A DNA stretch of 64,000 bases, taken from positions 144,539 to 208,538 of IMG/VR virus record IMGVR_UViG_3300050120_000361. The stretch is one strand, 5' to 3'. This document shows positions 596-57,536 of this stretch, one piece after another. Position 1 is the first letter of the stretch, and every line of letters starts with the position of its first letter. The notes below the pieces were generated by a model. It was not told where the DNA came from and searched no databases. It saw nothing but the letters and a program-made list of their open reading frames with translations. A program made the translations under genes and the position numbers.

Positions 596-3500
596 ATGGG
601 ACAGAACATAGACACTCTCAAAAAGATAACGTACACCACAATGGACACGTTCCTCGAGGACCTTAACAGGAACTTCGCGGTAATACAGAATTCCCCATTG
701 TATAAGGGCGTTCCCGGACAGGGTGGTCCAGAAGGCGACGACGGTACCGCCGGCACGCGCGGCTCTTCCTTCATTTTCGTTTCACTTCAGTCCTTCCAGG
801 CGATATTCCCGAATGAGCTGCAGGCCGGAAGCGACATATCGCTGATATACCTGAACTCAAAGCTCGGAACGTTTGAGAACCAGCAGCTGCTGATGCAGGC
901 CCTCGGGGTTACGCAGCTCGTGGACAAGGACATCGTGGTGCTGACTAACACCGAGATGCTCTCGTACTCTTACGGGGCAAACACGTTTTCGGACACTGGA
1001 ATAGCCTTCAACCAGCAGACTTCCCTGGCGGCATCTATAGAGCAGGAGATTGAGACGTATGTGGCTTACTACGTGCAGAACAGTTCGGTAATCAACAGCA
1101 TAAAGAACATATTCTCCGATTTCCAGTCGCTTGGCAAGAACTACCCGGACACCAACAACACATTCACCACCACATCCATAACGGGCTCAACGGTGTACTC
1201 GCCGTACATACCCGGGTACAACAGCCAGATAGGCGTTCCGATAACTAACCACAAGTACTTCGGCTTCCAGGACAATGAGTTCCCTGTCAACAATGCAGGC
1301 ACTACTGTCTTCGGCTCGATAAAGCAGTACTACAACATGCTGATGGCAACCGTCTCAACGGACGGCAACAACACGCTGAACTCGGCATACGCTCCCGGCG
1401 TCAACAACATACCATCCGCCATATTCCTGCAGGACACCTACAACAACGGGCTGCTGGTCGGCTACAAGGGAAAGGCGAACCTGCGGAACTTCGGCTCCAT
1501 ATACAAGAATGAGGTAGACGAGTTCGTGATACAGTCGGACGCCGGCTCGCAGGACTCCGAGTACAGCAAGCTCCTGCTGCACGCAACCTACATGAAGTAC
1601 GCCAAGATCGTGTATTTCATGAACGACCTGCAGGTTAGCAGGGACCTGACGGTTGGGGGCGACCTGGACACCAAGGCGGTAAACACCGGAAAGTACACTG
1701 CTGGCGCCAGTTCCGGCAACAGCTTCAACAGCGGGGTTTCCGAATTCGGCGTACAGGAGAGCGGCTCGGTGAACAAGTCCGTAGCTACAACCGAGCAATG
1801 GCCCAACTACCCGAGCGCCGTCCTCGTGGCGGACAGCGTTGGCAACATACTGAAGAGCTACGGCATTGAGACAGCCGCTGAGAATGGGGCTGACCTCGTG
1901 GACCTGGCGCCAATAACCGTAATACCGAACAGCTCGCACAGCATACTGACTTCGAACTATTTCTCGTTCCTTGCCCAGAAGATAAACGCCGTTACGACCT
2001 ACGCCGCAAACAACTACTGGCGCAAGAACCAGTTCAATACCGGTGAAATATCGGACATTACGACATCGGATTCGCTGAACACCACCGGCAATACCAACCT
2101 CAGCGCGATGCTCACGCTCGTAAAGAATACGGGAATAGCTACGCTTACGGCCAACCAGTTCATTGACAATTCAGTGGCGAAGAAGTACGGCTTCTTCAAG
2201 GGAAACGTGTTCGTTACGGACGCTAACGGCAACCTGTCGCAGTCATACTTTTTGGACACCATCTACCCGCCAGACAGCGAGATAACCTCACCCGCCGACC
2301 TGCCGATATACTCCACGTCATCGCAGACGCTTATATCCACGTACCATTACGCGCACCTCGCGCAGAAGATAAACGCCAACAACAGCAATTTGGCCGCCAA
2401 CTACTGGTCCAAGGCTCAGTTCAGCACCTTCGCGATACCCAACCTGGCTCTCAGCGGCGACCTTTCCGCAAGGGGCAGCGTGGACTTCTCGCCGAACGGT
2501 GGCTCAAGCGTTTTCCACATAGACAATACCGCTGGCTCGATGACAATCGGCTCGACCACCTCACAGGTAGTTGTGCAGACGAACTCGTTAAAGCTGCAGC
2601 AGTTTCCAAGCAATGTGATAGTCACCGACGGTGCGGGAAACGTGGTGAACACCTACTCCATTGAGACCAACCAGTTCGCTTCGGGGGACCAGGCCGACGC
2701 CAACCCAATAACGGTGAACGTCACATCGGGCAGCAAGATACCCACTTCGGCCAATGTCGGATGGCTCGCCACAAAGCTCAACAATTTCATGGCGTGGGTT
2801 CAGGCCAATTACTGGAACAGGACCCAATTGTCCAATGGCTCCGTAAGCGACATAAGGGCGACCAACTCAATAAAATCCGACAACATACTCCAGGCGGGCA
2901 ACTCCTCGGACACTACGTTTTCCGCTAACGGTTCTACGGCCGTTCTTGGCAAGTCAAACGGCTCTACCACGATACGCGGCTCGGTCATAAACTTCGCCAA
3001 CCAGCCTTCAATAGTTCTGACAACAGACGCGTCAGGCAACCTCACGGGAAGCTACACCATTGAAACCGCAAAGCCTGTGTACACTTCTCAGTCGGACATT
3101 ACCAACAACTACTGGGCCACAGGAGCGAGCGCATTCGACACGGTTGCCTCATCTGCTGGCGGCGTTGTAACATCGGATATGTTCCTGTTCATAATGCGGA
3201 ACTTCAACTCCGTAAGGCAGCTCCTGTTCAACAGGCCGACCTATGCGGAGCTGAACAGCGTGCTGCCATCTGGTTCGATAATCATGTGGACTAACAAGAC
3301 CGGCTCGGTTCCATCCAACTTCACCATATGCGACGGCAGGGCCCTCGGCGGAAGCGGCGGCCTGATATTCACCGACAACCTGATAGACAAGTTCATTAAG
3401 GGCTCTCTTACCCCTGCGGTCGATGGCGGAAACGCGGGCCACCAACAGGTCCTTGTAACAGCCAACCTTGCGGCACACGGGCACAATGTGACAGTGGATG

Positions 3501-3787
3501 CGGGCGGCCTGCACACCCACAACGTAGAAGTAGGAGGAGGCCACACGCACACCCTGGCTCTTACGAGATCGCCGTACCACACATACGGTTCAGGGTCTGA
3601 CACGCCATACATATCTGGTCCTGGTGCTCAAGACATTCTTGGAACAAGCAACCAGGGAAGTCACAGCCACGTCATAGACTATGACGGAACCCATTCGCAC
3701 ACGGCCACAGCCGACGCCGCGGGAAGCGGCACAGCTTTCAGCGTGGAGCCACAGAGCTACACCGCCATATTCATCATGAAGAACTAA
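596..3787 (+). CDS. tail fibre protein with collar domain and HxH metal-binding tip
   Basis: N-terminal collagen-like GxxGxx run; repeated 'V.D..GN...Y.IET...NYW' units; collar motif 'LPSGSIIMW...PSNFTICDG'; AHGH/LHTH/GHTH/SHSH/THSH motifs; ends 'YTAIFIMKN'. Confidence 0.85.
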   Translation: MGQNIDTLKKITYTTMDTFLEDLNRNFAVIQNSPLYKGVPGQGGPEGDDGTAGTRGSSFIFVSLQSFQAIFPNELQAGSDISLIYLNSKLGTFENQQLLMQALGVTQLVDKDIVVLTNTEMLSYSYGANTFSDTGIAFNQQTSLAASIEQEIETYVAYYVQNSSVINSIKNIFSDFQSLGKNYPDTNNTFTTTSITGSTVYSPYIPGYNSQIGVPITNHKYFGFQDNEFPVNNAGTTVFGSIKQYYNMLMATVSTDGNNTLNSAYAPGVNNIPSAIFLQDTYNNGLLVGYKGKANLRNFGSIYKNEVDEFVIQSDAGSQDSEYSKLLLHATYMKYAKIVYFMNDLQVSRDLTVGGDLDTKAVNTGKYTAGASSGNSFNSGVSEFGVQESGSVNKSVATTEQWPNYPSAVLVADSVGNILKSYGIETAAENGADLVDLAPITVIPNSSHSILTSNYFSFLAQKINAVTTYAANNYWRKNQFNTGEISDITTSDSLNTTGNTNLSAMLTLVKNTGIATLTANQFIDNSVAKKYGFFKGNVFVTDANGNLSQSYFLDTIYPPDSEITSPADLPIYSTSSQTLISTYHYAHLAQKINANNSNLAANYWSKAQFSTFAIPNLALSGDLSARGSVDFSPNGGSSVFHIDNTAGSMTIGSTTSQVVVQTNSLKLQQFPSNVIVTDGAGNVVNTYSIETNQFASGDQADANPITVNVTSGSKIPTSANVGWLATKLNNFMAWVQANYWNRTQLSNGSVSDIRATNSIKSDNILQAGNSSDTTFSANGSTAVLGKSNGSTTIRGSVINFANQPSIVLTTDASGNLTGSYTIETAKPVYTSQSDITNNYWATGASAFDTVASSAGGVVTSDMFLFIMRNFNSVRQLLFNRPTYAELNSVLPSGSIIMWTNKTGSVPSNFTICDGRALGGSGGLIFTDNLIDKFIKGSLTPAVDGGNAGHQQVLVTANLAAHGHNVTVDAGGLHTHNVEVGGGHTHTLALTRSPYHTYGSGSDTPYISGPGAQDILGTSNQGSHSHVIDYDGTHSHTATADAAGSGTAFSVEPQSYTAIFIMKN

Positions 3788-3788
3788 T

Positions 3789-5573
3789 ATGTCAGAAAGC
3801 CAGGACATAGGGATATTTGAGGACGGCAACGACGGCTTCGCGAGCTATCAGGGAATGATTTTCTGGGAGAACGCGGTGCTGTACGTGGTCCAAAAATTCA
3901 CCAAATTCGACATTGACAAGCTTTCGCTTGCGGTAGACCAGCAGGACCTTTTCGACATAAAGGCTGCCTACTCCTACGACAACAGGAACTGGAGCGAGCC
4001 GAAGCCGCTTGATGATTGGCAGGCAGAGAACGAGTACCTGCAGGCCAATGCTGAGTATCCGGACCTGCAGTACGTTTGGATAAGCCTCTGGTTCATGAAG
4101 CGCGAGCCAAGCGACAGGGTTACGGACACGCTCTACATCAGGCAGAACACCGACAAGAACCTTTACATCTGCAGGGTTGCGGAAATATCATACAACGGTT
4201 CGTCTTTGGACTTCAACGACGAGGACGTGATACACGTGCGGCCGTTCCACAACGTAATAGACAGGTACCCCAAATGGAACTTCTACGACAACCAGCAGGT
4301 GAACATACGCAGGTGGAAGGACATGTGCAGGTCCACGTTGTACAGTCATGGGCACGTTGCCGTTTGGTTTAAGACGCTGCCGGTTGAGTCCGCCACGCAA
4401 AACACCTTCGCTAACCATGTGATGAGGAACGTGGTTTCTATTAAGAAGCTGTTGGTGATTTCACCGAACAACGAGATACCTTCAGAGAAGCAGGTCTACA
4501 CCGAGTGGGACATGCCTCTGATGGACGATTTCGTTATCCACGTGGTTGACGAGCTCTTCAAGAACGCGTTCGGAGAGGACACGGTTCCCCTCCAGAAGGA
4601 CTACCTGTACATACCAATGCTTGACAGGCTTTTCAAGGTGAGCAATGTGCAGCCCTCAGACAAGCGCTTCATGGGCAAGGTCGGTTGGTGGGAGTGTTAC
4701 CTAGCAAAATACGAGGAGGACGCCACTGTGGGCATGAAGCCCGGTCTCCGTGAGGAAATGGAGCAATTCGATGGTATGGACGAAGCTCTTGAAGGCTTCA
4801 ACGTCATTGAGGAGCTTGAGGACATGCGGGAAGATGCGGTGCTTGACGCCGAAAAGATCTCACACCTAACGGCTGATGAGAAGAAGGCCGTCAACCAGAA
4901 CTATTCTAACAAGCTAGTGGACAGCACCAATTTCGTTGACCTGAAGGACACTGAGAGCCAGCGCTCCCTTTACTCGAAGCGTCTCGACATAATTTCAGTA
5001 AACCCCGACGGCAATTCGCTCTTTCCGGTGACAATGTACAACTGCGCCGCGATAGGCTCAAGGGAGGTTGCGCTGACATACGACCTGAAGGACTACACGG
5101 CCACGAGCGGCAACAGGCTGACTGTCGGCGGGACTCTTTCATTCTCTTTTGATTTCGTTCTGCAGTCCAAATTCAACGGTGAACTGTTCGACCTGTCTCC
5201 CGCAATGACGCTCGTAATGTCGAGAGCGTGCAAGCTGTCCATAGTGCTAAACTCCACGCAGGTTACCCAAAAGGCGGACTATGCCTTCGTTGCCGGCGAG
5301 TACTACAAGATTGAACTGGATTGGACCAAGTCAATAAACCAACTGGCTCTCAGGATATTTCTGCTGGCTGACGGGGCAAAAACCATAGCCTATCAGAACA
5401 TATACATAGTGAATGGCGGACTCAATACCGACCCATTCGGCTCAACACCGCAGCAGCTGATAATGTACGGCGGAAACTGGCTGTGCGGGCAGACAAAACT
5501 CGACATCGACGAAAAATCGATAATAGCCGACGCGGTTAACCCGATACTTGTTCTGAACAAGTTCGGCCTATAA
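3789..5573 (+). CDS. neck/head-completion protein, T4 gp14-like core with extra domains
   Basis: 'DFVIHVVDELFKNAFGEDTVPLQKDYLYIPMLDRLFKVSNV' resembles the gp14 'P.EGDLIYFP....LFEI..V' motif; position before the sheath gene. Confidence 0.55.
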   Translation: MSESQDIGIFEDGNDGFASYQGMIFWENAVLYVVQKFTKFDIDKLSLAVDQQDLFDIKAAYSYDNRNWSEPKPLDDWQAENEYLQANAEYPDLQYVWISLWFMKREPSDRVTDTLYIRQNTDKNLYICRVAEISYNGSSLDFNDEDVIHVRPFHNVIDRYPKWNFYDNQQVNIRRWKDMCRSTLYSHGHVAVWFKTLPVESATQNTFANHVMRNVVSIKKLLVISPNNEIPSEKQVYTEWDMPLMDDFVIHVVDELFKNAFGEDTVPLQKDYLYIPMLDRLFKVSNVQPSDKRFMGKVGWWECYLAKYEEDATVGMKPGLREEMEQFDGMDEALEGFNVIEELEDMREDAVLDAEKISHLTADEKKAVNQNYSNKLVDSTNFVDLKDTESQRSLYSKRLDIISVNPDGNSLFPVTMYNCAAIGSREVALTYDLKDYTATSGNRLTVGGTLSFSFDFVLQSKFNGELFDLSPAMTLVMSRACKLSIVLNSTQVTQKADYAFVAGEYYKIELDWTKSINQLALRIFLLADGAKTIAYQNIYIVNGGLNTDPFGSTPQQLIMYGGNWLCGQTKLDIDEKSIIADAVNPILVLNKFGL

Positions 5574-6409: not shown

Positions 6410-9130
6410 ATGGACCCAAGGTTATTAGCAATTGCAGCCAAAGCTGCAGGAACTTACTTTATCGTGACGGACAATTCGCTTGTTCAAACGACTGCAGTAC
6501 CGCCTAACCTACGGATAATTTTTGTGAATGTACCGGCCGGTCCTGTTAATACGGTGGTGGTATTTCAGCAAGGAGACACCGCAGGCCTGGCCTCAATATT
6601 CGGAACCGCTTCCCGCACGCAGGAGAAGAAGGGCAACTACTCACTTAGGACGTGCAACGACGCGCTTGTCGGCGGACCGATAGGAGTGATAAACCTGCGC
6701 GTCTTCGCTTCAGAAGACCTTGTGGGAGTCGCCGGCATATCACCTAACAGCACCTTTTTGGAGGACAAGACCACGGCTTACGCCAACGTCTTCAACACCA
6801 ATGGCTTCTGGACGGCCCAGGCCAAAAACATAGCTCCGCTGATGTCCCGCGCCAACTACCTGAACTTCGCAAACGTCGGAGCTTCGAACGTCAGCATATT
6901 CGTCACCTCGGCAATACCGGCCAACTACCAGTCGCTTACCAGCCAGTACGGCAACACGCTTACGGCTATGAGCCTGAGCGTTGACGACTATCCTGGTTTG
7001 GACATGGGCATCAAGCTGGCCGACACATTCGTTGACGTTTACGTTTTCGCGAACACTTTCGACCCGCAGACGGTTTCAACCAACCGCTACTACGGCCAGC
7101 TGTTCAACAGCGACGGGAGCATCAACTACGAGAACCTCCCTGCCCTTTCGCTCATACCTGAGTCCGGCTTCATACGCACAATCACTGGCTCACTGCTGCC
7201 AAACCTCCTGAGCGAAAGCGCGGCCGATTTGTCAATAGACACGCTGATGAACACGCTGTACCCTCAAACGGGCGTGATAGCGCACATCAATGATGATTTG
7301 CTGGAAACCGATTTGACCGAGCCGCCCGTGCTCAACGTTAACGCCACGGACGTGTACAACGCCGACGGCACGCTTAACCAGCTCACAGGTTCGAGCATCA
7401 GCATACTGTCGCACATGTTCAAGGAAATCGACGGAATGCCTACGGTTGACCTGGATGAGGTTCACGACGCTGACGTTGTGGGCATGAACACCCACCTGTT
7501 GCTTTCGGTTACTGGCACTATCTTCCAGGACGGCCAGGAAAACGGGAACAAGATACTCTCAATCTACGAGCAGGGCACGCGCATTGGCGACGAGATCGTT
7601 TTCGAGGATTTGGACACCGAGGACACCAAAACGGTTGTCGTTACTGGCCTTTCCATCATTGAGCAGAACGTCGCTACGGACCCAATAACGCTTGCGGCCC
7701 TTGCCAAGACCGTACTCACTATACCACAGCCCACAGACACCATTTCAGTTGTGTTGGATTGGACGGCGGTTACGCACGCGGACACTTACAGCGTGTACCG
7801 CAAGAAATCTACCGACTCGGCTTGGGTACTCCTGCAGGGCGCGATTTCAGCGCTTACCTACACTGACACGACTGTTCAGCCTTCATTCACATACCAATAC
7901 TACGTGTTGGCAGTGAACGCCGCGGCGGCCTACGTGTCCAGCATATCAATAGCCAAGCAGATAACCACCATTGCGGTTAACGGCGACCCAACCACAATTG
8001 GCGCTTCAACTGCGTCCAACAACCAACCGGCCGACCTTCCAACAACAATAGCTGGAACAAAGACCTATTCGGTTGCCCTGCTTACCTGCTCTGGACCGGT
8101 TAACGCCGCGTCATACACCCGCAAGAAGCCATTCAAGACAATCGCCGGCATAGCCACCATGCCTTTCGGTCTTGTCGCTTACACGCCGCGTACGGCCCAA
8201 TTCACCGACGGCACCTCGGCCACCCAGTCCGCGATACTCGACGTGATGAACACGCCGGGACTCGTTAAGGGCATAGCCGCTCTCGGCACGGCGCGCTACG
8301 TAGTGGACGCTTTCAAGTCCTTCGTTGAAGGGAGCTACAAGTACCAGTACGGCCAGTTGGCGTACACGCTCGACGCTAAGAACACTTTCGTCCGTAACAT
8401 CATCAACGAGCCGTTCCTGCAGGACCTGCAGAAGTCCACCAACCCGCTGTTCTCGCAAGGGCCTGGCTTCCCATTCGACCCAAGCTACCTCGCGCAGGGC
8501 GGCAATCCGGACTTCTCCACAGTCCTGCTCTCCAAGTTCGGACAAGGCTCTGAGATGAGCTTCTTCTTCGGCTCCGGTAACGTTGACGCTAAGGGCAATG
8601 TGTCTCCGGTTGCGGGAATAGTGTCAAACGTGTTCATTAACAAGCAGTTCCCTTACGACGTTGCTGCCAATGCGAGCGGCTACCTGACAGGCATAACAGG
8701 CCTTGAGGACAGCCCCAACGGTTCCGACGACCGCCTGCCATATGAGCAGTTCCTCTGGAACCCGATAATAGCGCAGAAGGGAAGCTTCACGATATACGGC
8801 AACTTTACCGGCCAGAAAATCAACACCTCCCTTCAGGCCATACACAACTCTGAGCTGCTCGCCTACGTTAAGGGCACCCTGCTAGCGATGACCATTGACG
8901 ACCCGTTCAAGAAGGGCCTGTACAACGAGTACCTCGCAACGCAGACCGAGGTCAACACTTTCATCCAGAGCCTCGTGCTCGCGGGCGCGATACAGCCGAA
9001 CCCTATCGTGATATGCGACGCCACCAACAACACCGTTGACGTGTCAAAGGCTAAAATCAAGCTGATACACGTAGAGTACACCGGCGTTGACTGCCTTGAC
9101 AAGACTGTGTTTGATTTGAACCTGGACTAA
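6410..9130 (+). CDS. contractile tail sheath protein with inserted FN3-like domain
   Basis: C-terminal 'WNPII...FTIYGNFT...SLQAIHNSELL' and 'VICDATNNT..V' typical of gp18 sheaths; FN3-like 'VVLDW...YSVYR...YTDT...YQYYVLAVN' at about 7710-7960. Confidence 0.88.
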   Translation: MDPRLLAIAAKAAGTYFIVTDNSLVQTTAVPPNLRIIFVNVPAGPVNTVVVFQQGDTAGLASIFGTASRTQEKKGNYSLRTCNDALVGGPIGVINLRVFASEDLVGVAGISPNSTFLEDKTTAYANVFNTNGFWTAQAKNIAPLMSRANYLNFANVGASNVSIFVTSAIPANYQSLTSQYGNTLTAMSLSVDDYPGLDMGIKLADTFVDVYVFANTFDPQTVSTNRYYGQLFNSDGSINYENLPALSLIPESGFIRTITGSLLPNLLSESAADLSIDTLMNTLYPQTGVIAHINDDLLETDLTEPPVLNVNATDVYNADGTLNQLTGSSISILSHMFKEIDGMPTVDLDEVHDADVVGMNTHLLLSVTGTIFQDGQENGNKILSIYEQGTRIGDEIVFEDLDTEDTKTVVVTGLSIIEQNVATDPITLAALAKTVLTIPQPTDTISVVLDWTAVTHADTYSVYRKKSTDSAWVLLQGAISALTYTDTTVQPSFTYQYYVLAVNAAAAYVSSISIAKQITTIAVNGDPTTIGASTASNNQPADLPTTIAGTKTYSVALLTCSGPVNAASYTRKKPFKTIAGIATMPFGLVAYTPRTAQFTDGTSATQSAILDVMNTPGLVKGIAALGTARYVVDAFKSFVEGSYKYQYGQLAYTLDAKNTFVRNIINEPFLQDLQKSTNPLFSQGPGFPFDPSYLAQGGNPDFSTVLLSKFGQGSEMSFFFGSGNVDAKGNVSPVAGIVSNVFINKQFPYDVAANASGYLTGITGLEDSPNGSDDRLPYEQFLWNPIIAQKGSFTIYGNFTGQKINTSLQAIHNSELLAYVKGTLLAMTIDDPFKKGLYNEYLATQTEVNTFIQSLVLAGAIQPNPIVICDATNNTVDVSKAKIKLIHVEYTGVDCLDKTVFDLNLD

Positions 9131-9155
9131 CCGGGCGGACAAGGAAACAAAAAAC

Positions 9156-9184
9156 AGGGAAAACGGCGAAAATCCGTTTTCCCT
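9156..9184 (+). terminator. stem-loop after sheath gene
   Basis: AGGGAAAACGG-N7-CCGTTTTCCCT perfect 11-bp stem. Confidence 0.65.
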
Positions 9185-9213
9185 AAATAACTTACTTATA
9201 AAACAAATAGGAT

Positions 9214-10476
9214 ATGAGAAACTTTTCTGAGCAGGACCCGGAACAGCTTATGCGGACTGACAGAGACTCATCCATTGAGAGGATATGCGAGAGCACCGGC
9301 CTTCCTATGGAAAACGTCGAAAAGATGTACGAGTCCATGAAGGCCGAAAAACTATCCGACACTGCCATAGTTGAACATTTCGAAAAGGCCGCAAAGCCTA
9401 AGCAAATGGTGAGCTGCTCAGAGTTCTTCGGCTCTATGGTGGCCGGCATAAGCGGCGTCGAGGGAGACATGGACGACGTCAAGAGAACCGGCATAACCCG
9501 CGGAATACTCAGGGCGCTTGACGCGATGTCCACCGGCGTTGACGGCCAAATGCTCGACTCAACGGAAATGCTCGCAGTGGTCAAGGGGCTTATAGAGATT
9601 AAGGACCCAAAGGCCAAGGGACTGCTGTCGACCGACGAGGAGGACAAACTGCTCATAGAGCCAGTAAGGCACGACTTTTCAAAGCTGAACGAGGCCACGA
9701 CGCTTTCAATGCCTGAGGATGACGCCATGAATACAGTGGAACTGTTCGAGGGGCTTAAGCACATACTGGGCAAGAACACCCGCCGATGGGGAAACGCCTA
9801 CAGGCTCACGAACTCATACGAGGCGATAATGAACTACATAGACGAGCAGACCAAGCAGATACAGCTTGAGGCCTCGATAACGAGCGTGGACGACGGGTTC
9901 CACATCGAGCTCCTGAACGACCTTCTGACCGGCAACGTCAACCCCATATACAAGTCGATAAACGGGGTTAGGCAGCTGATACCGGACGGGCAGACGCTGC
10001 TGTTCGATATGATACTGCTGGTGAACTCTTTCATGCAGCAGAACGACTACGCACTGCAGTACATAAGCAGGCAGAACGTGCTCGAGTACAAGACGGCCGC
10101 AAGGAACCTTCTGGCATCAATCTCGTCCTCGCGCCACCGCAGCAAGATTGTCTATGACAGCATGCGCAAGAATAACTACGACGAGGGCTCCGCGGAAGGC
10201 TATGACAACAACTTAAAGTGCGGCGGCCCAAGCGGCTATGCAAGTCAGAACTTCCTTGAGGAGTACACTGGCAGCATAGACAGCGGAAAGCTGCAGAACT
10301 ACGGCTGGAACCTTCCGCTCAAGGCTGTTGTGGACATGCTGAACCTAAGCAAGTCGATGTCTACGGACTTCAACCTGAAGATACGCCCGCTAATACGCAA
10401 CTTCGTGACCAAGGCCTACGGGCTGACTGGGCGCGTAGAGCGCGCGAAGAGGGAAGTGGCAATGTTCAAGATATAG
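9214..10476 (+). CDS. hypothetical protein, probable head-internal protein
   Basis: 420 aa with ICES/MYES/LNEA/LFEG putative prohead-protease motifs in the N-terminal half. Confidence 0.6.
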   Translation: MRNFSEQDPEQLMRTDRDSSIERICESTGLPMENVEKMYESMKAEKLSDTAIVEHFEKAAKPKQMVSCSEFFGSMVAGISGVEGDMDDVKRTGITRGILRALDAMSTGVDGQMLDSTEMLAVVKGLIEIKDPKAKGLLSTDEEDKLLIEPVRHDFSKLNEATTLSMPEDDAMNTVELFEGLKHILGKNTRRWGNAYRLTNSYEAIMNYIDEQTKQIQLEASITSVDDGFHIELLNDLLTGNVNPIYKSINGVRQLIPDGQTLLFDMILLVNSFMQQNDYALQYISRQNVLEYKTAARNLLASISSSRHRSKIVYDSMRKNNYDEGSAEGYDNNLKCGGPSGYASQNFLEEYTGSIDSGKLQNYGWNLPLKAVVDMLNLSKSMSTDFNLKIRPLIRNFVTKAYGLTGRVERAKREVAMFKI

Positions 10477-10528
10477 CCAAGGCAATAGATAACAAACAGA
10501 AACAAGAACAATTTAAAAATCAAAAGAT

Positions 10529-11116
10529 ATGTCAAATTTGATTCAATTCCCGCACACCACTAATTCAACAGCGGCTGTGCAACGCTACGAGCCCGTTATC
10601 AGCAGCAACTACAATGCGCACTTCGTGCTCATGGGCAACCTGAAAACCAAGCTCGGAGACTACGGCTTCCTTTCGGAGTACATCAAGTCCGTTACGGGCC
10701 TGTTCGTTGAGAAGGCCGGCGGCTCAATCGAGGGCGGGTACAAATGGATAAAGTTCCGTTACGACTCAAACGAGAAGGAGACGGTGTACGATGTGGTGGT
10801 TCAGTTCCACAACTTCCTGGACACCAACTCACGTATGTTCGTGTACAACGCGATAGTGGCCTGGTCACGCTTCAAGTACAACCCACTCACCGGCGAGAAG
10901 ACGCTGAAGGCGGACTACGCCAACGCAGCCATCGTCGGCGAGAAGTTCAACCGCGACGGCACCCTGTACTGGAGAAGGACCGGCCTGAACTGCTTTCCAA
11001 TGTCGGAAATTGAGGACATGGCCATGGACTACGGCAACCACGAGGCCGGCGAATTGAGCTGCACCTTCTCAGTGGATTACGTGCAGGACATCACCAACGA
11101 CCCGCGCCTCGCGTAA
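10529..11116 (+). CDS. tail tube protein (gp19-like)
   Basis: 195 aa downstream of sheath; 'FNRDG...NCFP..I....MDY......CTFSVDY' matches the gp19-type pattern. Confidence 0.8.
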   Translation: MSNLIQFPHTTNSTAAVQRYEPVISSNYNAHFVLMGNLKTKLGDYGFLSEYIKSVTGLFVEKAGGSIEGGYKWIKFRYDSNEKETVYDVVVQFHNFLDTNSRMFVYNAIVAWSRFKYNPLTGEKTLKADYANAAIVGEKFNRDGTLYWRRTGLNCFPMSEIEDMAMDYGNHEAGELSCTFSVDYVQDITNDPRLA

Positions 11117-11125
11117 ACTTAAGGG

Positions 11126-11170
11126 ATTTGACATATCTTTCATTTGGTTTCAGTCTCTTGCCTGAAACCA
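11126..11170 (+). promoter_or_regulatory. 3'-UTR element complementary to the tube gene's own start region, followed by a stem-loop
   Basis: ATTTGACATATCTTT (11126-11140) is the exact reverse complement of AAAGATATGTCAAAT (10523-10537); hairpin TGGTTTCAG-N8-CTGAAACCA at 11145-11170. Confidence 0.65.
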
Positions 11171-11187
11171 TTAAACATATACGGTAA

Positions 11188-12864
11188 ATGGCAAAATTCG
11201 GCTACGACGACCACAACTCGTCATTGAATACAAACACTCTGAAGCTCTCGAACGTCTACACGAACTGGGGATACCTTTTCCTGAACGCGGATGAGGAGTG
11301 CCGGGCCCTGATGCAGGAGCTCGTTGACGAGGAGCACGGCGGCTTCGTGCTCGTCAAGCCCCAGGACTTCGCCCTGCACATGCTAGACCTGTTCTTCAAC
11401 CTGTCGCCTGAGATACAGCCGCTTTTCGACGGCTACGACGCCATGCAGATAGCAGGAATGGAGCAGGTCTACAGGACCAATCCAAAGTCTATGGTAATGC
11501 GCCTGGCCGATGACCTAAGGGAGAACGAGTTCAACGGTTCGGGTCAGCGGTTCGCGGCTAACATTTACCCAATGACGCCTGAGGGCTTCTCTCAATGGCC
11601 GTCCGACTGGGCTTTTCCAATATACGTTGACGACAACATGCCAGGCGAAAATGCCGTGCATATCATAAACGAGGTGATGGAGTCCTCAGACCCTGAAGAG
11701 TACGAGGAGTACTACTGCTACGGCGGAGACTTTTTCTACAAGCGCAAGGACAGTCCTAAGTACTGGATGGACGAGGACGACGAGGCAGACGTGTCATTCG
11801 ATACAATCGAGGAGATGAAGCAGTACATCAACAACGGAGGGTGGGAGGGCACCCATGCGCCCGAACCGACCCCAGAGGTAGAGGAGGTTGCGAGCGACGT
11901 GGACGAGCTGCCGGAAGGTGAAAATGAAAGCATTTGGAGTGAAAAGCGTAAAGCATTTATTAAGATAGCCCGGAATGGAGAACCTGGAGTTTGGGATGAC
12001 GATCTAAATGTTTTTGTATTGACCGAAGAGTCAAAAAATGATACTGAGCCTGTTACAGCGGGAATAGTTGACAAGGCCTCTGAGGCCCAGCCTGAAATAA
12101 ACTGGTCCGACACAAAGACGGGGATTTCCGAAAAGGAGGAGTACAGCGCTCTTGTCAAGAAATTGGCTTTCGCCCAGCACAAGCTCGCCAAAACCAAGAA
12201 TTCCTACCGCAAGCCTACTCTTGGAGCGCCGCGGAAGGCCCCTGTGAAAATGGAGCAGTGGAAGAAGGACGCTTTGAAGCGCCTTGAAGGAGAGGTGTCC
12301 AAGGCGCTTAAGGCCATAGACCGCTTTAAGTTCAATCACGCCGGTTTGCGTCAGGTCATGAGACAGCTAAACATACCAGCAGCCTCTTGGAACGGAAGCG
12401 GGATGGTCAAGGAATGGGGCAATTGGACACAAGGCTACAAAATAAATGATGGCGGATGGTCGCCTGAGAAGGTTGACCTTTACCAGATAGGCAAGGAAAA
12501 ATTCCTGAACCTTATAAAGACGCTTGAGGCCAAGGGCTTTGAAATCGACGTTGTAAGCGAACCGAGCAAGGCTATAAACGGAGACAGTGTGGCATACTTC
12601 ACCATAGAGCAGTACCATACTGATGAGGATTTGAAGGGAAACACAAAATTGAATGAGGACGCGCCTGTAAGCCCTTGGGCTTTGGCGGTCGGTCCAGCAG
12701 TAGTGCTTTCTGTAGTGGTAGCCTCAGTGATAAGAGAGTACAAGAAAGGCAAGGCTAAGGCAGAGGCTGGAGGCGTTAAGATGGACGGGGCCACCCGCAA
12801 GAAGGTGCTAGTCAACGCGCTTCAAAAGGCGATACTCGAGGTGCAGAAGGCGCACAACTCATAA
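11188..12864 (+). CDS. KLSN-domain family protein 1 (mosaic, C-terminal TM helix)
   Basis: 'LKLSNVYTNW...LFDGYD' N-domain; module shared with 12870 gene; hydrophobic 'PWALAVGPAVVLSVVVASVI'. Confidence 0.7.
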   Translation: MAKFGYDDHNSSLNTNTLKLSNVYTNWGYLFLNADEECRALMQELVDEEHGGFVLVKPQDFALHMLDLFFNLSPEIQPLFDGYDAMQIAGMEQVYRTNPKSMVMRLADDLRENEFNGSGQRFAANIYPMTPEGFSQWPSDWAFPIYVDDNMPGENAVHIINEVMESSDPEEYEEYYCYGGDFFYKRKDSPKYWMDEDDEADVSFDTIEEMKQYINNGGWEGTHAPEPTPEVEEVASDVDELPEGENESIWSEKRKAFIKIARNGEPGVWDDDLNVFVLTEESKNDTEPVTAGIVDKASEAQPEINWSDTKTGISEKEEYSALVKKLAFAQHKLAKTKNSYRKPTLGAPRKAPVKMEQWKKDALKRLEGEVSKALKAIDRFKFNHAGLRQVMRQLNIPAASWNGSGMVKEWGNWTQGYKINDGGWSPEKVDLYQIGKEKFLNLIKTLEAKGFEIDVVSEPSKAINGDSVAYFTIEQYHTDEDLKGNTKLNEDAPVSPWALAVGPAVVLSVVVASVIREYKKGKAKAEAGGVKMDGATRKKVLVNALQKAILEVQKAHNS

Positions 12865-12869
12865 GCATT

Positions 12870-13727
12870 ATGGAAAGACTCAAACTAAGTAATTTCTGGG
12901 AAGTATGGCCCGAGCTATGCGCCACAGAACCCAAGTTCAAGCCTTTTGAAATGCTCGCGAACGTGTTCTCGACTTCGGACGGCAGGGCGATGCGGGCACA
13001 GCCGAAGGAGTGCACGGACTACCTGATGCGCATGTTCTCGAACTCGCAGCTTTTCAGGGGAATGTTCGGCGGCTACACGGAGCGGGAGGCCGACACCATT
13101 GCCGCAATGGTCGCGGAGAACGGGGACGGCTTCAAAGCGCTTTCAGAAAGGCTCGCCAAAACCTATGAGGCATGGACCGCGCTGGACGGGCCCAAGCGCA
13201 CTACGGACGAGGACTTCAAGAAGTACCTGATACTGGTGAATGAAACCAATATGGCGCAGGAGGCTTTTGACAGGATTAACGCCAAGGCGACCAATGAAAA
13301 GCTTCGCAAGGACCACGTGTTCGCATCCAAGTGGCGAGCCGCAAGGGCCGAAATCAACAAGGCAGAACGCAAAACGCGCCAATTCATTCACAACACCCTG
13401 AACATCGTTAAAGGCGTAAGGTCATTAGGCCTGGAGGCATCCAAGTCGGAAACCACAGCCGTAAAGGGCTGGCACACAATTACCGACGGTTACTCTATAT
13501 CCGAGGGCGATATAGAGCTGTACGGCGGCACGGGCGTGGAGAAGTATTCGGCTATACTGGCCTGGCTTAAGTCCAACGGATACGAGATAGAGTCGACTGA
13601 AAAGCCGTGGCGCTCAGGCAAGGGCATGCGCGCCAACATAAGAGTTAAGCCATGGCACGACGAGGACGCGCTGAAGGAGCGGCACAGGAAAACCGCGGAG
13701 AACATTGACAGATACATAAACGGTTAA
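12870..13727 (+). CDS. KLSN-domain family protein 2
   Basis: 'LKLSNFWEVW...MFGGYT' N-domain. Confidence 0.7.
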   Translation: MERLKLSNFWEVWPELCATEPKFKPFEMLANVFSTSDGRAMRAQPKECTDYLMRMFSNSQLFRGMFGGYTEREADTIAAMVAENGDGFKALSERLAKTYEAWTALDGPKRTTDEDFKKYLILVNETNMAQEAFDRINAKATNEKLRKDHVFASKWRAARAEINKAERKTRQFIHNTLNIVKGVRSLGLEASKSETTAVKGWHTITDGYSISEGDIELYGGTGVEKYSAILAWLKSNGYEIESTEKPWRSGKGMRANIRVKPWHDEDALKERHRKTAENIDRYING

Positions 13728-44471: not shown

Positions 44472-45107
44472 ATGAACAATAGACCAAACCTTATACCTAA
44501 TATTTTCGAAAGAGGATATAGAGGAGATGGTAAGTATTTGACAAGAAATGGTGCTAAAGATACCAAAGAATATAAGACTTGGTATGGAATGCTTGAGCGG
44601 TGTTATAGCGGAAATAAGCAAAAAAGTTCACCAACATATATAGGTTGTAAGGTATGCGATGAATGGCTTAATTTTCAGGTATTTGCTGAATGGTACAACA
44701 GTCAACCATATTCACACAAACAGGACATTAAATTCGACCTTGATAAGGATTTGCTTATTGATGGTAATAAAATATATTCACCAGAAACCTGTATTTTAAT
44801 ACCATCTATAATAAACATGCAATTTGCAAATATCGGTAAAGGTATTCATTTACCCGGAGCCAATTGGTTGCCTGACAGGAATAAATTTATGGCGCGTGGC
44901 CCAAGAATTGAAGATGGAAAACAGTCTACTCTTGGATATTTTTCCTTAGAAGAGGAAGCACACAAAGCCTACATAAATGCTAAAGAAAATTATATTCAAA
45001 AGCTTGCTGAATTATATTCCAATGTTCTTGATATTCGTATTTATCAAAAATTATCAAATTATAGTTTCAATTTAGATTTGTACAGCAAATCCAATTTTAT
45101 TAACTAA
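44472..45107 (+). mobile_element. free-standing HNH homing endonuclease gene with AP2-like C-terminus
   Basis: Abruptly AT-rich; 'YKTWYGMLERCY...VCDEWLNFQVFAEW...LDKDLL..GNKIYSPETC..IP..IN', 'LGYFSLEEEAH.AY..AK'. Confidence 0.88.
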
Positions 45108-50291: not shown

Positions 50292-50367
50292 GTTCGGACC
50301 GCAGCTGACCCCAGCAACGGAAAAGACTTAACAGAAATTATCAACCAAAAATACAAAATCTAACGAT

Positions 50368-52242
50368 ATGTTTAATACTAAAGTTACCAACGAGCCTATC
50401 TACAAACACACTCAGTTGGACCCACGCTTAGTGGAGAAAATCACACCGCTCATGGAGAGCGCGTTCGGCGCTGACCTGAACAACTACGAGGACGGCAAGG
50501 ACCCCCGCAGAAAGGTTATCCGCGACGAGAAGATCAAATTCCTTTCAGAGCAGTACGCAAACCGCGTGCGTATAGCAAACGTGATGGGCGTTCACCCATT
50601 GAATGAAGACGCGAACATCTTCGGCGCCATCCCTAACATGAACAAATTGTTCGAAAGCGTTGACAGCCCGGGAAGCATCATCGGTATGGGCGAGGTTCGC
50701 AACGCGGACAACGGAAACCAATACAATGGCGGTTACTGGAACCCTGCTTACAAGGCTGGTTCAGGCGACATCCCGTCATACGTGTTCGGTCTTCAGGCCC
50801 ACATCGCGATGTACTGTATAGGTTTCGACCTGCTGCCTACCATCTCGGTTGACACGCCTAAGGTTATGGTGTCATTCGTTGATACCGTTTACGGTGGCGG
50901 TACTTTTGATGACGCTGAGAACATGCCTTCTTTCATCGAGATTTCGAACTCCATATTCACTTCGGCCCTCATCGACACCACAGCCAAATTGAAACGCGCC
51001 ACCTCTGTGGTTACTTTCCGCGCCGCCGCTGGCGCTGGCGCTTTGGCGATGCAGTGTCTGTTCATGCTGAAAAGCACCGTTAAGCCTGCCATCACTGTAC
51101 AGGTTATATCTACCGGTACTTTGGACGGCTCGAACGTTTACACCGCTGACAACGCAAACTCGGTTGCCACCATCATCAGCACTATCAATGCCGCCGCCGC
51201 CGGTGTCGCTAAGTTCCAATACCTTAACCCATCTGACGGCACTACGGTTGTTCCGGTTTCATTGACCGCCGCGTCTACCGTTGTTGGTTATGCGTCTGCA
51301 ACTCGTACTAACATCGCTGAAGCTGTTTCAAACAACAACAGCCTTGGCGGCATGTCACGTGCTCAGCAGGAAAAAGGCCCGGTTAACAAGTTGAACGTTA
51401 TCGCCATGGACAAGCAATTGGAAATGGTTGGTATCGAAATCGAGGCCGACACCTCCAACATCCAGATCAAGGATATGGCGGCAATGGGCATCAACGTTAT
51501 CGCGCGTCTCTACAACGGTGTTCAAAACGCCTTGGTTCAAACCCTTGACGAGGTTATCCTTACCCACCTTTACCGTATGGGCGTGCAGCACATGTACAAC
51601 ACTTACCTGGCTAATGGAACGAACTACTCACTGTACATCGGAGCGCCTTCAAACGCTAACATCGCATTCAGCGCTGTTAACAGCGGCAACTTCGTCTACA
51701 ACGACATGCTCGGCGTTGACCAGAGAACTGCCATGGGCAATATCGTTAACTCGATACAGTCTTCGGGCTATGAGAACCAGATGACGCACAACGACCGCCT
51801 ATTGGCTCGTATCCTGTTGGTTGCTGAGTTCGTTGGCCAGAACAACCGTATCGCTCCGCCGGATTGGTTGGTGCTTTCGGGCGGTCTTGCCGCTGCTATC
51901 AAGAAGCACAGCAAGTACATCCAGTCACCTGTCGCCAACACGTTGAGCTCGGCCCCAGAGCTTCACTACTCGGGCACGTTGTTTGAGACCATGAGCGTTT
52001 ACAAGACGCCGCGTATCGACTTCAATGACCCGCGTATCCTGATGGGCCGCCGCGGCAATGACACCGACCCTGGTTCTAAGTTCCTGGCGTATGACTTGGC
52101 CGCGAGCCGTCAGACCCTGAACCCGGACACCATGGCTGAGAAAATCAGAGTGTGGTCACGTTTCGCCATCGCGGACATCGGCTTCTACCCTGAACTGAAT
52201 TATGCGACCGTGGTAGTTCAAAATGACTACAATTGGGCATAA
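50368..52242 (+). CDS. major capsid protein (T4 gp23-like)
   Basis: Follows portal-protease-scaffold; strong codon bias; 'IGFDLLP', 'QIKDMAAMGIN', 'TM.EKI..WSRFA'; N-terminal LMES/LNED/LFES motifs; terminator follows. Confidence 0.9.
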   Translation: MFNTKVTNEPIYKHTQLDPRLVEKITPLMESAFGADLNNYEDGKDPRRKVIRDEKIKFLSEQYANRVRIANVMGVHPLNEDANIFGAIPNMNKLFESVDSPGSIIGMGEVRNADNGNQYNGGYWNPAYKAGSGDIPSYVFGLQAHIAMYCIGFDLLPTISVDTPKVMVSFVDTVYGGGTFDDAENMPSFIEISNSIFTSALIDTTAKLKRATSVVTFRAAAGAGALAMQCLFMLKSTVKPAITVQVISTGTLDGSNVYTADNANSVATIISTINAAAAGVAKFQYLNPSDGTTVVPVSLTAASTVVGYASATRTNIAEAVSNNNSLGGMSRAQQEKGPVNKLNVIAMDKQLEMVGIEIEADTSNIQIKDMAAMGINVIARLYNGVQNALVQTLDEVILTHLYRMGVQHMYNTYLANGTNYSLYIGAPSNANIAFSAVNSGNFVYNDMLGVDQRTAMGNIVNSIQSSGYENQMTHNDRLLARILLVAEFVGQNNRIAPPDWLVLSGGLAAAIKKHSKYIQSPVANTLSSAPELHYSGTLFETMSVYKTPRIDFNDPRILMGRRGNDTDPGSKFLAYDLAASRQTLNPDTMAEKIRVWSRFAIADIGFYPELNYATVVVQNDYNWA

Positions 52243-52322: not shown

Positions 52323-52349
52323 CATATCATACAAAACAAATATGATATG
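52323..52349 (+). promoter_or_regulatory. hairpin sequestering the HNH start codon
   Basis: CATATCATA-N9-TATGATATG, 9-bp perfect stem including ATG 52347. Confidence 0.6.
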
Positions 52350-57398: not shown

Positions 57399-57536
57399 TT
57401 CATTTCAGGATTGGCAAGAAGCAATCCTATTGCAACATTTTCAAATAAATTGCATATTAAGCGGATTTTTGCCTATATTACAGTATAATAAATAAATGCT
57501 AACTAACACTTAAAAACAAACCAATCCTGAAATGAA
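57399..57536 (+). promoter_or_regulatory. 16-bp inverted repeat pairing with the sigma start codon, with a competing local hairpin
   Basis: TTCATTTCAGGATTGG (57399-414) / CCAATCCTGAAATGAA (57521-536, ATG at 57532); alternative AGGATTG/CAATCCT (57407-428). Confidence 0.7.

What the first reader, a model, noticed from the sequence alone, without database searches (positions are those of the whole stretch)
10523..11170. Tail-tube mRNA end-to-end fold-back: 3'UTR is the exact complement of its own start region
Seen: 10 nt after the tube stop codon, ATTTGACATATCTTT (11126-40) perfectly complements AAAGATATGTCAAAT (10523-37, spanning ATG 10529), extendable by two G-U pairs. A 9-bp hairpin follows and an ATAGATA motif sits at 10485. 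A 15-bp match placed exactly on the AUG about 600 nt away is unlikely by chance. Established analogy: fold-back inhibition in hok and other type I toxin mRNAs. Inference: full-length tube mRNA closes on itself so that translation is limited to nascent or processed transcripts, possibly setting tube stoichiometry or preventing polytube formation. I know of no such mechanism for a phage structural gene.
Basis: partly seen in the sequence, partly recalled or inferred. Interest (0 to 1): 0.8.

Follow-up and report, generated by a model that had tools for sequence, protein, structure and literature searches.

The report
Tail-tube mRNA pairs start with tail
In this peat jumbo phage the untranslated stretch just after the tail-tube gene is an exact complement of the gene's own start codon region. 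A related phage keeps the same pairing with a different sequence. It therefore looks like a selected RNA fold-back that masks the start site, a device known from a few bacterial mRNAs but which I could not find reported for a phage structural gene.

Summary
Window 10523-10537 and 11126-11140 are a perfect 15-nt inverted repeat. It is extendable by two G-U pairs, spans the ATG at 10529, and its 3' arm starts 10 nt after the stop. A 9-bp hairpin follows (11145-11170).

- **Chance:** it is not chance. Shuffled 3'UTRs reach 14 nt or more in 1 of 40,000 trials. Of 28 genes with a usable 3' intergenic region, only this one pairs with its own start (z -5.8).
- **Gene identity:** the gene encodes a tail-tube fold.
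- **Comparative evidence:** one of the five closest relatives (L064, 84% identical protein) has its own start-to-3'UTR helix of 7+2+11 bp. It is built from different nucleotides, begins 2 nt after its stop, and is also followed by a hairpin. Four other close relatives and about 40 distant ones lack it.
- **Second mask:** a 16-nt perfect mask covers the ATG of a sigma-factor-like gene at 57532.
- **Inversion:** contigs from four peat runs show no inversion; no RNA run was listed.

Best reading: a cis RNA fold-back (icaR/hok-like in operation, a member of neither) that closes the completed mRNA over its start site. The effect on translation is inferred, not shown. I rate it a new variant of a known kind.

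The parts
10485..10491 (+). ATAGATA motif, probable promoter element 44 nt upstream of the tube ATG
   Evidence: The window has 9 copies on + and 0 on -. Seven are intergenic or lie at a gene end, 10-161 nt upstream of a start, including the sheath gene 6410, the tube gene 10529 and gene 57532. A promoter role is inferred.
10513..10519 (+). TTAAAAA box just upstream of the 5' arm
   Evidence: There are 4 copies on + and 0 on -. Three lie 16-22 nt before an annotated ATG (tube, 29404, 57532). A similar box sits before the tube ATG in many relatives. Its function is unknown.
10523..10539 (+). 5' arm of the fold-back: start region from -6 to +11, including ATG 10529-10531
   Evidence: It forms 15 Watson-Crick pairs plus 2 G-U pairs with 11124-11140.
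10529..11116 (+). Tail tube protein gene (195 aa)
   Evidence: It matches phrog_32623 and has 227 homologues. The AlphaFold2 model (pLDDT 72) matches the tail tube proteins of Klebsiella phage KP1 and T4 gp19, with Foldseek E values from 1e-5 to 1e-3. It lies two genes after the tail sheath gene 6410-9130 (phrog_34521).
11124..11140 (+). 3' arm of the fold-back (anti-start sequence) in the 3' untranslated region
   Evidence: Duplex energy is about -20 to -23 kcal/mol.
11145..11170 (+). Stem-loop (9-bp stem, no T-run after it), probable 3'-end or stabiliser hairpin
   Evidence: Relatives also carry a hairpin after the tube stop. The simple terminator scan did not call it, because it has no T-run.
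11170..11180 (+). Second, weaker anti-start-like segment ATTAAACATAT after the hairpin
   Evidence: It is an 11-nt perfect complement of 50366-50376, the start region of gene 50368 (phrog_28442, putative capsid gene). A match of this length to one of 51 start regions has about a 0.06 chance, so it may be coincidence.

Best explanation
This is a cis-acting RNA fold-back.

**Proposed mechanism.**
- The tube gene appears to be its own expression unit: an ATAGATA motif upstream, the gene, and a hairpin downstream.
- While the 588-nt coding region is being transcribed, the start region is open and ribosomes can load.
- Once the first 25 nt of the 3'UTR emerge, 11124-11140 can zip onto 10523-10539. 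The 17-bp helix is worth about -20 kcal/mol and buries the AUG and positions -6 to +11.
- This phage's leaders almost never carry a Shine-Dalgarno sequence. Initiation should therefore depend strongly on an unstructured start region, and a helix this stable should shut the completed mRNA.
- The helix begins 8-10 nt past the stop, so terminating ribosomes need not open it.
- The net effect would be a per-transcript limit or timer on tube synthesis. Reopening might come from 3' trimming or a nuclease.

**Shown versus inferred.**
- Shown: the complementarity, its statistical excess, its uniqueness among genes, its presence in predicted folds, and its recurrence with a different sequence in a relative.
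- Inferred: that both arms are on one RNA, that the helix forms in vivo, and that it lowers translation.
For: - The arms are perfectly complementary and placed on the ATG.
- Chance is excluded. Cognate matches are 15 and 16 nt against 9 or less for 56 other genes and 13 or less in 3192 non-cognate pairs. Shuffles give about 7e-6. z is -5.8 and unique among 28 genes.
- The helix is in both the MFE and centroid folds of 10478-11180.
- Predicted AUG accessibility falls from 0.84-0.98 to 0.00 when the 3'UTR is added.
- Relative L064/L065 (tube protein 83.6% identical) pairs AAAGATT (-7..-1), UC, and GCAAGCGCAGT (+7..+17) with a 3'UTR segment that starts 2 nt after its stop and is followed by a hairpin.
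  - Duplex energy is -29 kcal/mol, stronger than all 90 non-cognate combinations.
  - The longest perfect block is 11 nt (3 of 20,000 shuffles). The 11+7 collinear blocks were reached by 0 of 20,000 shuffles.
  - The helix is in both the MFE and centroid folds.
- At start positions +7 to +11 both partners differ between the two phages while pairing is kept.
- Only 5 of 58 leaders carry a Shine-Dalgarno-like core.
- Start-site masking by perfect helices recurs in this phage and its family: the 57399/57521 helix here, and the L008 and L035 hairpins.
- Experimental precedent for 3'UTR-to-start-region pairing that blocks initiation: icaR (PMC3868564).
Against: - There is no transcript data. No RNA run was listed, so the 5' and 3' ends are unknown.
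- The hairpin lacks a T-run and may not terminate transcription.
- The feature is absent from L053, L054, L055 and L066 in the same subclade, and from about 40 more distant relatives. It is dispensable or recently evolved, and only two sequences carry it.
- In L064 the AUG itself sits in a 3-nt internal loop, and the ORF-only fold already pairs it. The on/off logic is therefore not obviously the same in the two phages.
- Restricting translation of a protein needed in hundreds of copies per virion is counter-intuitive.
- Fold predictions for 700-nt RNAs are unreliable.
Confidence: 0.55

Rival explanations
1. The same RNA helix forms, but its main role is mRNA fate rather than a brake on translation. 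One option is that joining the two ends protects a heavily used late mRNA from end-dependent nucleases, as proposed for B. subtilis hbs. The other is that it creates a double-stranded RNase III site that processes or destroys the mRNA, as with icaR or lambda sib retroregulation.
For: - The helix sits directly next to a 3' stem-loop, and both ends of the presumed short transcript are involved.
- In L064 the AUG stays in an internal loop.
- Precedents: the hbs 5'/3'-UTR interaction (PMC5737220) and icaR RNase III cleavage (PMC3868564).
Against: - Protecting the ends does not require covering the start codon. Yet in both phages the helix is centred on the start region, -7 to +11/+17.
- 17 bp is short for a canonical RNase III site (own knowledge).
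- No data exist on RNA ends or half-life.
Confidence: 0.15
2. The anti-start sequence acts in trans. The 3' end of the tube mRNA (anti-start seed plus hairpin) would be released or act as a 3'UTR-derived small RNA. It would then pair with the start regions of other tube mRNA molecules, and possibly of gene 50368, giving dose-dependent negative feedback.
For: - The layout of stop, single-stranded seed, then stem-loop resembles 3'UTR-derived sRNAs (the resemblance is own knowledge).
- A second anti-start-like segment, 11170-11180, matches the start region of gene 50368 over 11 nt.
- The left arm of the 57399/57521 pair also lies just after a stop codon and overlaps a local hairpin.
Against: - The 11-nt match is within chance at about 0.06.
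- Rfam found nothing in the window.
- No RNA data exist.
- Intramolecular pairing is kinetically favoured if both arms are on one RNA (inference).
Confidence: 0.12
3. It is a DNA-level inverted repeat. The arms could be sites for inversion of the tube gene, paired operator sites for DNA looping, or a relic of a rearrangement or template switch that copied the start region in inverted orientation.
For: - The arms flank the whole gene.
- The region downstream of the tube gene is a mosaic junction with different genes in different relatives.
- Perfect identity without mismatches fits a recent copying event.
Against: - Contigs from four peat runs lie on 9200-12900 with no other letters and no joints, so no inverted form was seen. 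This test is weak, because contigs drop rare variants.
- Flipping the tube gene would be lethal and leaves only a 21-codon ORF (sequence).
- The two perfect repeats in the window share no sequence, so two different proteins would be needed.
- A recombinase or operator site would not be expected to change in step with the N-terminal codons as it does in L064. The L064 helix is also interrupted by an asymmetric loop, which is RNA-like.
- Both window repeats cover an ATG.
Confidence: 0.08
4. It is a chance match in AT-rich intergenic DNA with no function.
For: - Intergenic leaders are A-rich, which raises the match probability.
- The scan looked at many windows.
- Most relatives lack it.
Against: - The probability is about 7e-6 per gene and about 4e-4 per window.
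- A second 16-nt case lies on another ATG in the same window.
- The independent helix in L064 was reached by 0 of 20,000 shuffles, i.e. below 5e-5.
- A -20 kcal/mol helix on a start site cannot be phenotypically silent (established dependence of initiation on start-region structure; own knowledge).
Confidence: 0.05

Closest known systems
icaR mRNA of Staphylococcus aureus (5'-3' UTR base pairing; PMC3868564)
   Same: A motif in the 3'UTR pairs with the ribosome-binding region of the same mRNA. In icaR this blocks the initiation complex and creates an RNase III substrate. It is the closest described mechanism.
   Different: - icaR pairs with the Shine-Dalgarno sequence through a short UCCCCUG motif in a long (over 300 nt) 3'UTR of a bacterial regulator gene.
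- Here there is no Shine-Dalgarno sequence, the AUG itself is covered by a 15-17 bp perfect helix, and the 3'UTR is about 55-70 nt.
- Here the gene is a phage structural late gene.
- Nothing has been tested experimentally here.
hok mRNA fold-back inhibition (hok/sok type I toxin-antitoxin; own knowledge of the Gerdes laboratory work)
   Same: The full-length mRNA is closed by pairing of its 5' and 3' ends and is translationally inert. Translation needs nascent or 3'-processed RNA.
   Different: - hok encodes a toxin.
- The hok fold-back pairs the extreme 5' end rather than the start codon.
- hok has a leader ORF (mok), an antisense RNA (Sok) and defined tac/ucb/dcb elements.
- None of these is evident here. 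The protein has a tail-tube fold.
Phage T4 genes e, soc, 49 and I-TevI: start-region sequestration in early read-through transcripts (review PMC3014915)
   Same: A phage mRNA start region is buried in an intramolecular helix to control when the gene is translated.
   Different: - In T4 the masking strand lies upstream, with a late promoter between the arms, so late transcripts escape.
- In the tube gene the masking strand is 588 nt downstream, after the stop codon, so every complete transcript carries it.
- The second mask in this window (57399/57521) does have the T4-like layout.
B. subtilis hbs mRNA 5'/3'-UTR interaction (PMC5737220)
   Same: The 5' and 3' untranslated regions of one highly expressed mRNA interact.
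   Different: In hbs the interaction affects RNase Y access and stability rather than covering the start codon.
RNA phage long-distance interactions (MS2/Qbeta; own knowledge)
   Same: Long-range RNA pairing over hundreds of nucleotides gates a phage start site. Kinetic folding lets only nascent chains be translated, as for the MS2 maturation gene.
   Different: Those are genomic RNAs of ssRNA phages, and the partner lies upstream or within another coding region. They are not the 3'UTR of a dsDNA phage late mRNA.

Membership tests
icaR-type 5'-3' UTR interacting mRNAs | A 3'UTR segment is complementary to the ribosome-binding region of the same gene | tested here: met
   15 Watson-Crick plus 2 G-U pairs, 10523-10539 with 11124-11140.
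icaR-type 5'-3' UTR interacting mRNAs | The target is the Shine-Dalgarno sequence | tested here: not met
   There is no Shine-Dalgarno sequence upstream of the tube ATG, and only 5 of 58 genes have such a core. The helix covers the AUG and positions -6 to +11 instead.
icaR-type 5'-3' UTR interacting mRNAs | Both segments are present on one transcript (mapped 5' and 3' ends) | not testable with these tools
   No RNA run was listed. Promoter and 3' end are inferred from the ATAGATA motif and the hairpin only.
icaR-type 5'-3' UTR interacting mRNAs | Pairing blocks the initiation complex and gives RNase III cleavage | not testable with these tools
   This needs toeprinting and RNase III assays.
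hok-type fold-back inhibition (type I toxin-antitoxin) | The gene encodes a small membrane toxin controlled by an antisense RNA | tested here: not met
   The product is a 195-aa protein with a tail-tube fold. Rfam found nothing, including hok/sok families, at gathering score.
hok-type fold-back inhibition (type I toxin-antitoxin) | 5'/3' pairing closes the full-length mRNA, and 3' processing activates it | tested here: inconclusive
   Closure is predicted. Processing cannot be tested.
T4-type start-region sequestration (e, soc, 49, I-TevI) | The start codon region lies in an intramolecular helix | tested here: met
T4-type start-region sequestration (e, soc, 49, I-TevI) | The masking strand lies upstream, with a late promoter between the arms | tested here: not met
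   The masking strand is downstream of the stop codon. The layout is met only by the sibling helix 57399/57521, which encloses the conserved element GCCTATATTACA.
Invertible DNA segments (invertons) | Both orientations are present in sequence data | tested here: inconclusive
   Contigs of 4 runs show only the window orientation and no joints. Contigs drop rare variants, and raw reads were not available.
Invertible DNA segments (invertons) | A site-specific recombinase is encoded nearby, with a shared repeat consensus | tested here: not met
   No recombinase family appeared among the neighbouring proteins scanned; not all window proteins were scanned. The two perfect repeats in the window share no consensus.
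Contractile-tail tube proteins | Tube fold, and a gene position next to the sheath gene | tested here: met
   Foldseek matches to the KP1 tube, T4 gp19 (5w5f) and other injection-system tubes, E values 1e-5 to 1e-3. The sheath gene lies at 6410-9130. A minor tube-like paralogue cannot be excluded.

The most novel reading that the evidence does not exclude
Phages of this family, whose mRNAs lack Shine-Dalgarno sequences, would use long perfect helices on start codons as a general, fast-evolving regulatory device. In the tube gene the device would have taken a closed-loop form. The 3'UTR clamps the start site of the completed mRNA, giving each transcript a fixed translation budget. Alternatively, it could place the terminating ribosome beside the start codon for re-use. 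The clamp would be kept across lineages by co-variation with the N-terminal codons. This would be the first 3'UTR-to-start-codon autoregulatory loop in a virus structural gene.
Probability: 0.3. Interest if true: 0.75.

Novelty: new variant of a known kind. Interest (0 to 1): 0.62.

Why it matters
- **Rarity.** Regulation by bacterial and phage 3'UTRs is poorly explored, and pairing of a 3'UTR with its own start region rests on very few cases (icaR, hok).
- **Scope.** A natural example in a phage late structural gene, supported by co-variation in a second phage, would extend the mechanism to viruses. It would also extend it to hosts that initiate translation without a Shine-Dalgarno sequence, where start-region structure should matter most.
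- **Testability.** It yields a small model of about 680 nt for asking how a highly expressed virion protein can be dosed or timed per transcript.
- **Annotation.** Searching for complements of start regions is a cheap way to find post-transcriptional control in uncultured phage genomes.

Tried and rejected
- **DNA similarity to deposited phages:** no match for 9000-13000.
- **Rfam at gathering score:** nothing in the window.
- **Sigma-70 promoter and intrinsic-terminator scans:** nothing at either arm. The 3' hairpin is not called because it lacks a T-run, and the TTGACA inside the 3' arm has no -10 partner.
- **The 15-mer as a dispersed motif:** rejected. Only the two arms and one 3-mismatch hit at 50362 were found.
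- **Family-wide conservation:** about 40 non-redundant relatives have no comparable complement of their tube start region, so this is not a family-wide feature.
- **Relic of the start of the extra 139-aa gene that follows the tube gene in L053:** that gene begins AAGATATGTCAA, but it has no homologue in the window. Met-Ser starts in that context are common here. The idea is unsupported but not excluded.
- **Inversion of the tube gene:** no joints in contigs of 4 runs.
- **RNA evidence:** no RNA run was listed.
- **Walking further along the 208-kb contig:** 19 kb were added, with no further long-range perfect repeat of 15 nt or more. The one 14-nt pair lies inside a 3040-aa gene and fits chance. 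Walking then stopped at that gene.
- **Energy-only comparison across genes using coding flanks:** too noisy to be useful.
- **L034 and L066:** their duplexes are weak (p about 0.02-0.05). The L034 duplex lies mostly in the coding region, at +1 to +30, rather than over the whole start region. The L066 duplex uses the terminator U-run against the A-rich leader. Neither was counted.
- **Alignment of the 3'UTRs across the subclade:** no usable homology.

Full report
**1. What is in the sequence**

The window is the last 64 kb of a 208.5-kb viral contig from a peat metagenome, IMGVR_UViG_3300050120_000361.
- All of the 58 called genes of 50 aa or more lie on the + strand.
- Coding GC is 0.52-0.56.
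- Leaders are A-rich, and only 5 of 58 carry a Shine-Dalgarno-like core.

The finding's coordinates are exact.
- AAAGATATGTCAAAT (10523-10537) and ATTTGACATATCTTT (11126-11140) are perfectly complementary, with 588 nt between them.
- The left arm holds the ATG (10529) of a 195-aa ORF that ends at 11116.
- The right arm begins at the 10th nt after the stop.
- Two G-U pairs (10538-39 with 11124-25) extend the helix to 17 bp.
- A 9-bp stem-loop follows at 11145-11170.
- ATAGATA sits at 10485.

**2. The gene**

- The ORF matches phrog_32623, of unknown function. It has no Pfam hit and has 227 homologues.
- An AlphaFold2 model built from 30 homologues has pLDDT 72. Foldseek matches it to tail tube proteins: Klebsiella phage KP1, T4 gp19 (5w5f), and the tubes of other contractile injection systems.
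- The tail sheath gene lies two genes upstream (6410-9130, phrog_34521).
- "Tail tube" is therefore supported, although a minor tube-like paralogue is not excluded.

**3. Is it chance?**

It is not.
- In the whole window, and in 19 kb of extra contig, there are only two long-range perfect inverted repeats of 15 nt or more. One is this pair. The other is 57399-57414 with 57521-57536 (16 nt, 106 nt apart). Both cover a start codon.
- I took each gene's start region (-15..+15) and searched its own transcript region, from 200 nt upstream to 100 nt past the stop. The longest perfect complement is 15 for the tube gene, 16 for gene 57532, and 9 or less for the other 56 genes. In 3192 non-cognate pairs the maximum is 13.
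- 40,000 shuffles of the 71-nt 3' intergenic region reached 14 once, with a tail falling about 3.8-fold per nt. That extrapolates to about 7e-6 for 15.
- By duplex energy against its true 3' intergenic region the tube gene has z -5.8. The other 27 testable genes lie above -1.5.
- The 15-mer is not a dispersed motif.

**4. Predicted RNA behaviour**

- The helix appears in both the minimum-energy and centroid structures of 10478-11180.
- Its duplex energy is about -20 kcal/mol.
- I assumed a transcript start at 10498, that is, shortly after the ATAGATA motif. Without the 3'UTR, the predicted unpaired probabilities of A, U and G of the start codon are 0.98, 0.89 and 0.84. With the 3'UTR they are 0.00.
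- In the nascent 5' part only a weak 7-bp A-U hairpin forms, and it displays the AUG in its loop.

**5. Comparative evidence**

*Distant relatives.* Fifty-six further loci with tube homologues (59-86% identity) were fetched. About 40 of them were non-redundant and usable. None of these has a comparable complement of its start region. The feature is therefore not family-wide.

*The close subclade.* It has six members: the window, L053, L054, L055, L064 and L066 (tree). One relative, L064, stands out. It is identical to L065 from a second sample.
- Its gene was called short. The true start is at L064:979, and the protein is 83.6% identical to the window's.
- Its 3'UTR, beginning 2 nt after the stop, pairs with its own start region in three blocks: AAAGATT (-7..-1) with AATCTTT, UC with GA, and GCAAGCGCAGT (+7..+17) with ACTGCGCTTGC. 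A terminator-like hairpin follows.
- The duplex is worth -29 kcal/mol, stronger than all 90 non-cognate combinations.
- The 11-nt block was reached by 3 of 20,000 shuffles. The collinear 11+7 blocks were reached by 0 of 20,000.
- The helix is in the MFE and centroid folds of L064:945-1640.

*Co-variation.* The -6..-1 part (AAAGAT with ATCTTT) is shared with the window. The coding part differs: Ser-Asn-Leu in the window against Ser-Ala-Ser-Ala-Val in L064. The 3'UTR follows that difference. At start positions +7 to +11 both partners differ between the two phages and still pair.

This is the strongest argument that pairing itself is selected. A recombinase or operator site has no reason to track N-terminal codons.

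*Relatives without it.* L053, L054, L055 and L066 show no significant pairing.
- L053 and L055 carry an extra 75-77-aa gene in front of the tube gene.
- L053 has only 24 nt after the tube stop.
- So the feature was either lost there or gained twice.

**6. Context that supports an RNA-level reading**

*The sibling helix (57399/57521).*
- It buries the ATG of a 663-aa gene. The middle of that protein resembles region 2 of FliA/WhiG sigma factors. The matches are weak but consistent, and JGI names one homologue a sigma subunit.
- Its left arm lies 28 nt after the preceding stop and overlaps a local 7-bp hairpin.
- Between the arms lies GCCTATATTACA. This element is conserved in three relatives (near-identical in L061) and unique in the window.
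- That is the layout of the T4 e/soc/49/I-TevI masks (PMC3014915).
- The relatives conserve the start region but have an ordinary terminator hairpin where the window has the anti-start arm.

*Masks in relatives.* In L008 and L035, 15-bp perfect local hairpins directly after the tube gene bury the ATG of the next gene.

*Upstream motifs.*
- ATAGATA occurs 9 times on + and never on -, mostly 10-55 nt before gene starts. It precedes the sheath gene, the tube gene and the sigma-like gene. It is probably a promoter element.
- A TTAAAAA box lies 16-22 nt before the ATG of the tube gene, gene 29404 and the sigma-like gene.

**7. DNA-level alternatives**

- Contigs of four peat runs cover 9200-12900 with no differences and no joints. 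No inverted form was seen, but contigs cannot show rare variants.
- Inversion would replace the tube ORF by a 21-codon ORF.
- The two repeats in the window share no consensus.
- The relic hypothesis has no support: the 139-aa gene of L053 has no homologue in the window.

**8. Mechanism**

The most likely mechanism is a cis fold-back that closes the completed tube mRNA over its start site.
- Ribosomes load co-transcriptionally.
- Once the 3'UTR is made, the helix competes with 30S binding.
- The helix starts 8-10 nt beyond the stop, so it need not be unwound by terminating ribosomes. This rests on my own knowledge of the ribosome footprint.
- In a system without a Shine-Dalgarno sequence a -20 kcal/mol helix on the AUG should be strongly inhibitory. 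This rests on the established dependence of initiation on start-region structure, again my own knowledge.

What the phage gains is not shown. It could be a per-transcript budget, timing with later activation by 3' processing, mRNA stabilisation, an RNase III site, or ribosome re-use. In L064 the AUG lies in a 3-nt internal loop, and the helix abuts the stop codon. Terminating ribosomes would open it there, so the detailed logic may differ between the two phages.

**9. Comparison with known systems**

- In operation this is closest to icaR, where 3'UTR pairing with the ribosome-binding site blocks initiation and creates an RNase III site (PMC3868564). It also resembles hok fold-back inhibition and the hbs 5'/3' interaction (PMC5737220).
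- It is a member of none of these. There is no Shine-Dalgarno target, no toxin, no antisense RNA and no upstream masking strand.
- A full-text search for a comparable phage late-gene case returned nothing. The library is incomplete, so this is absence of evidence only.

**10. Verdict**

- The functional inference remains untested.
- This is a new variant of a known kind.

Noticed in passing
window 57399-57414 and 57521-57536 (gene 57532-59523): A second perfect start-site mask. A 16-nt inverted repeat, 106 nt apart, buries the ATG of a 663-aa sigma-factor-like gene. Duplex energy is -25 kcal/mol, and the helix is in both the MFE and centroid folds. The left arm lies 28 nt after the previous stop and overlaps a local 7-bp hairpin (57408-14/57422-28). 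The layout is like the T4 e/soc masks. Relatives L058, L059 and L061 conserve the start region but lack the anti-start arm.
   Followed up: partly
window 57471-57482: GCCTATATTACA lies between the two arms. It is conserved upstream of the sigma-like gene in L058 and L059, near-identical in L061, and unique in the window. It is a candidate promoter.
   Followed up: partly
window 6355, 10485, 15379, 26562, 43502, 55772, 57371: The ATAGATA motif has 9 copies on + and none on -. Seven are intergenic or at gene ends, 10-161 nt before a start. It is a probable promoter element of this phage.
   Followed up: partly
window 10513, 29173, 29388, 57510: The TTAAAAA box has 4 copies on + and none on -. 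Three lie 16-22 nt before an annotated ATG (tube, 29404, 57532), and the fourth (29173) has an ATG 15 nt downstream. Both masked genes have it 3-4 nt before the masked arm. A similar box precedes the tube ATG in many relatives.
   Followed up: no
window 11170-11180 and 50366-50376: ATTAAACATAT after the tube hairpin is an 11-nt perfect complement of the start region of gene 50368-52242 (phrog_28442, probably the major capsid gene by position). The start regions of that gene and the tube gene are alike in 12 of 15 positions. The chance of such a match is about 0.06.
   Followed up: partly
window 44472-45107 and 52347-53291: Two ORFs have GC 0.32-0.34 in a genome of 0.52-0.56. The first has a weak AP2-domain hit (E 0.0013), as in some homing endonucleases. 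They are probably recently acquired mobile genes, one beside the portal gene and one beside the capsid-like gene.
   Followed up: partly
L008:3116-3130/3149-3163 and L035:3091-3105/3117-3131: In two relatives a 15-bp perfect hairpin directly after the tube gene buries the ATG of the next gene. In L035 it competes with a 7-bp terminator-like hairpin.
   Followed up: partly
L018:3398-3412 and 4403-4417 (gene 3411-4382): Another start region (-13..+2) has a 15-nt perfect complement 21 nt after its own stop. The sequence is A/T only in a very AT-rich genome. About 0.1 such cases are expected among the 208 genes scanned.
   Followed up: no
window 61773-61802: A 30-nt perfect palindrome (15-bp arms, no loop) lies after gene 60776-61744. 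It is probably a terminator.
   Followed up: no
whole window: Only 5 of 58 genes have a Shine-Dalgarno-like core, and leaders are 44% A. This suggests a host that initiates without Shine-Dalgarno pairing, such as Bacteroidota. The host was not determined.
   Followed up: no
L054 / L070 (JASLEG010000377.1): A 7-kb contig carrying sheath and tube genes of this phage family is binned in a MAG labelled Burkholderia sp. This is probably a binning artefact, not host evidence.
   Followed up: no
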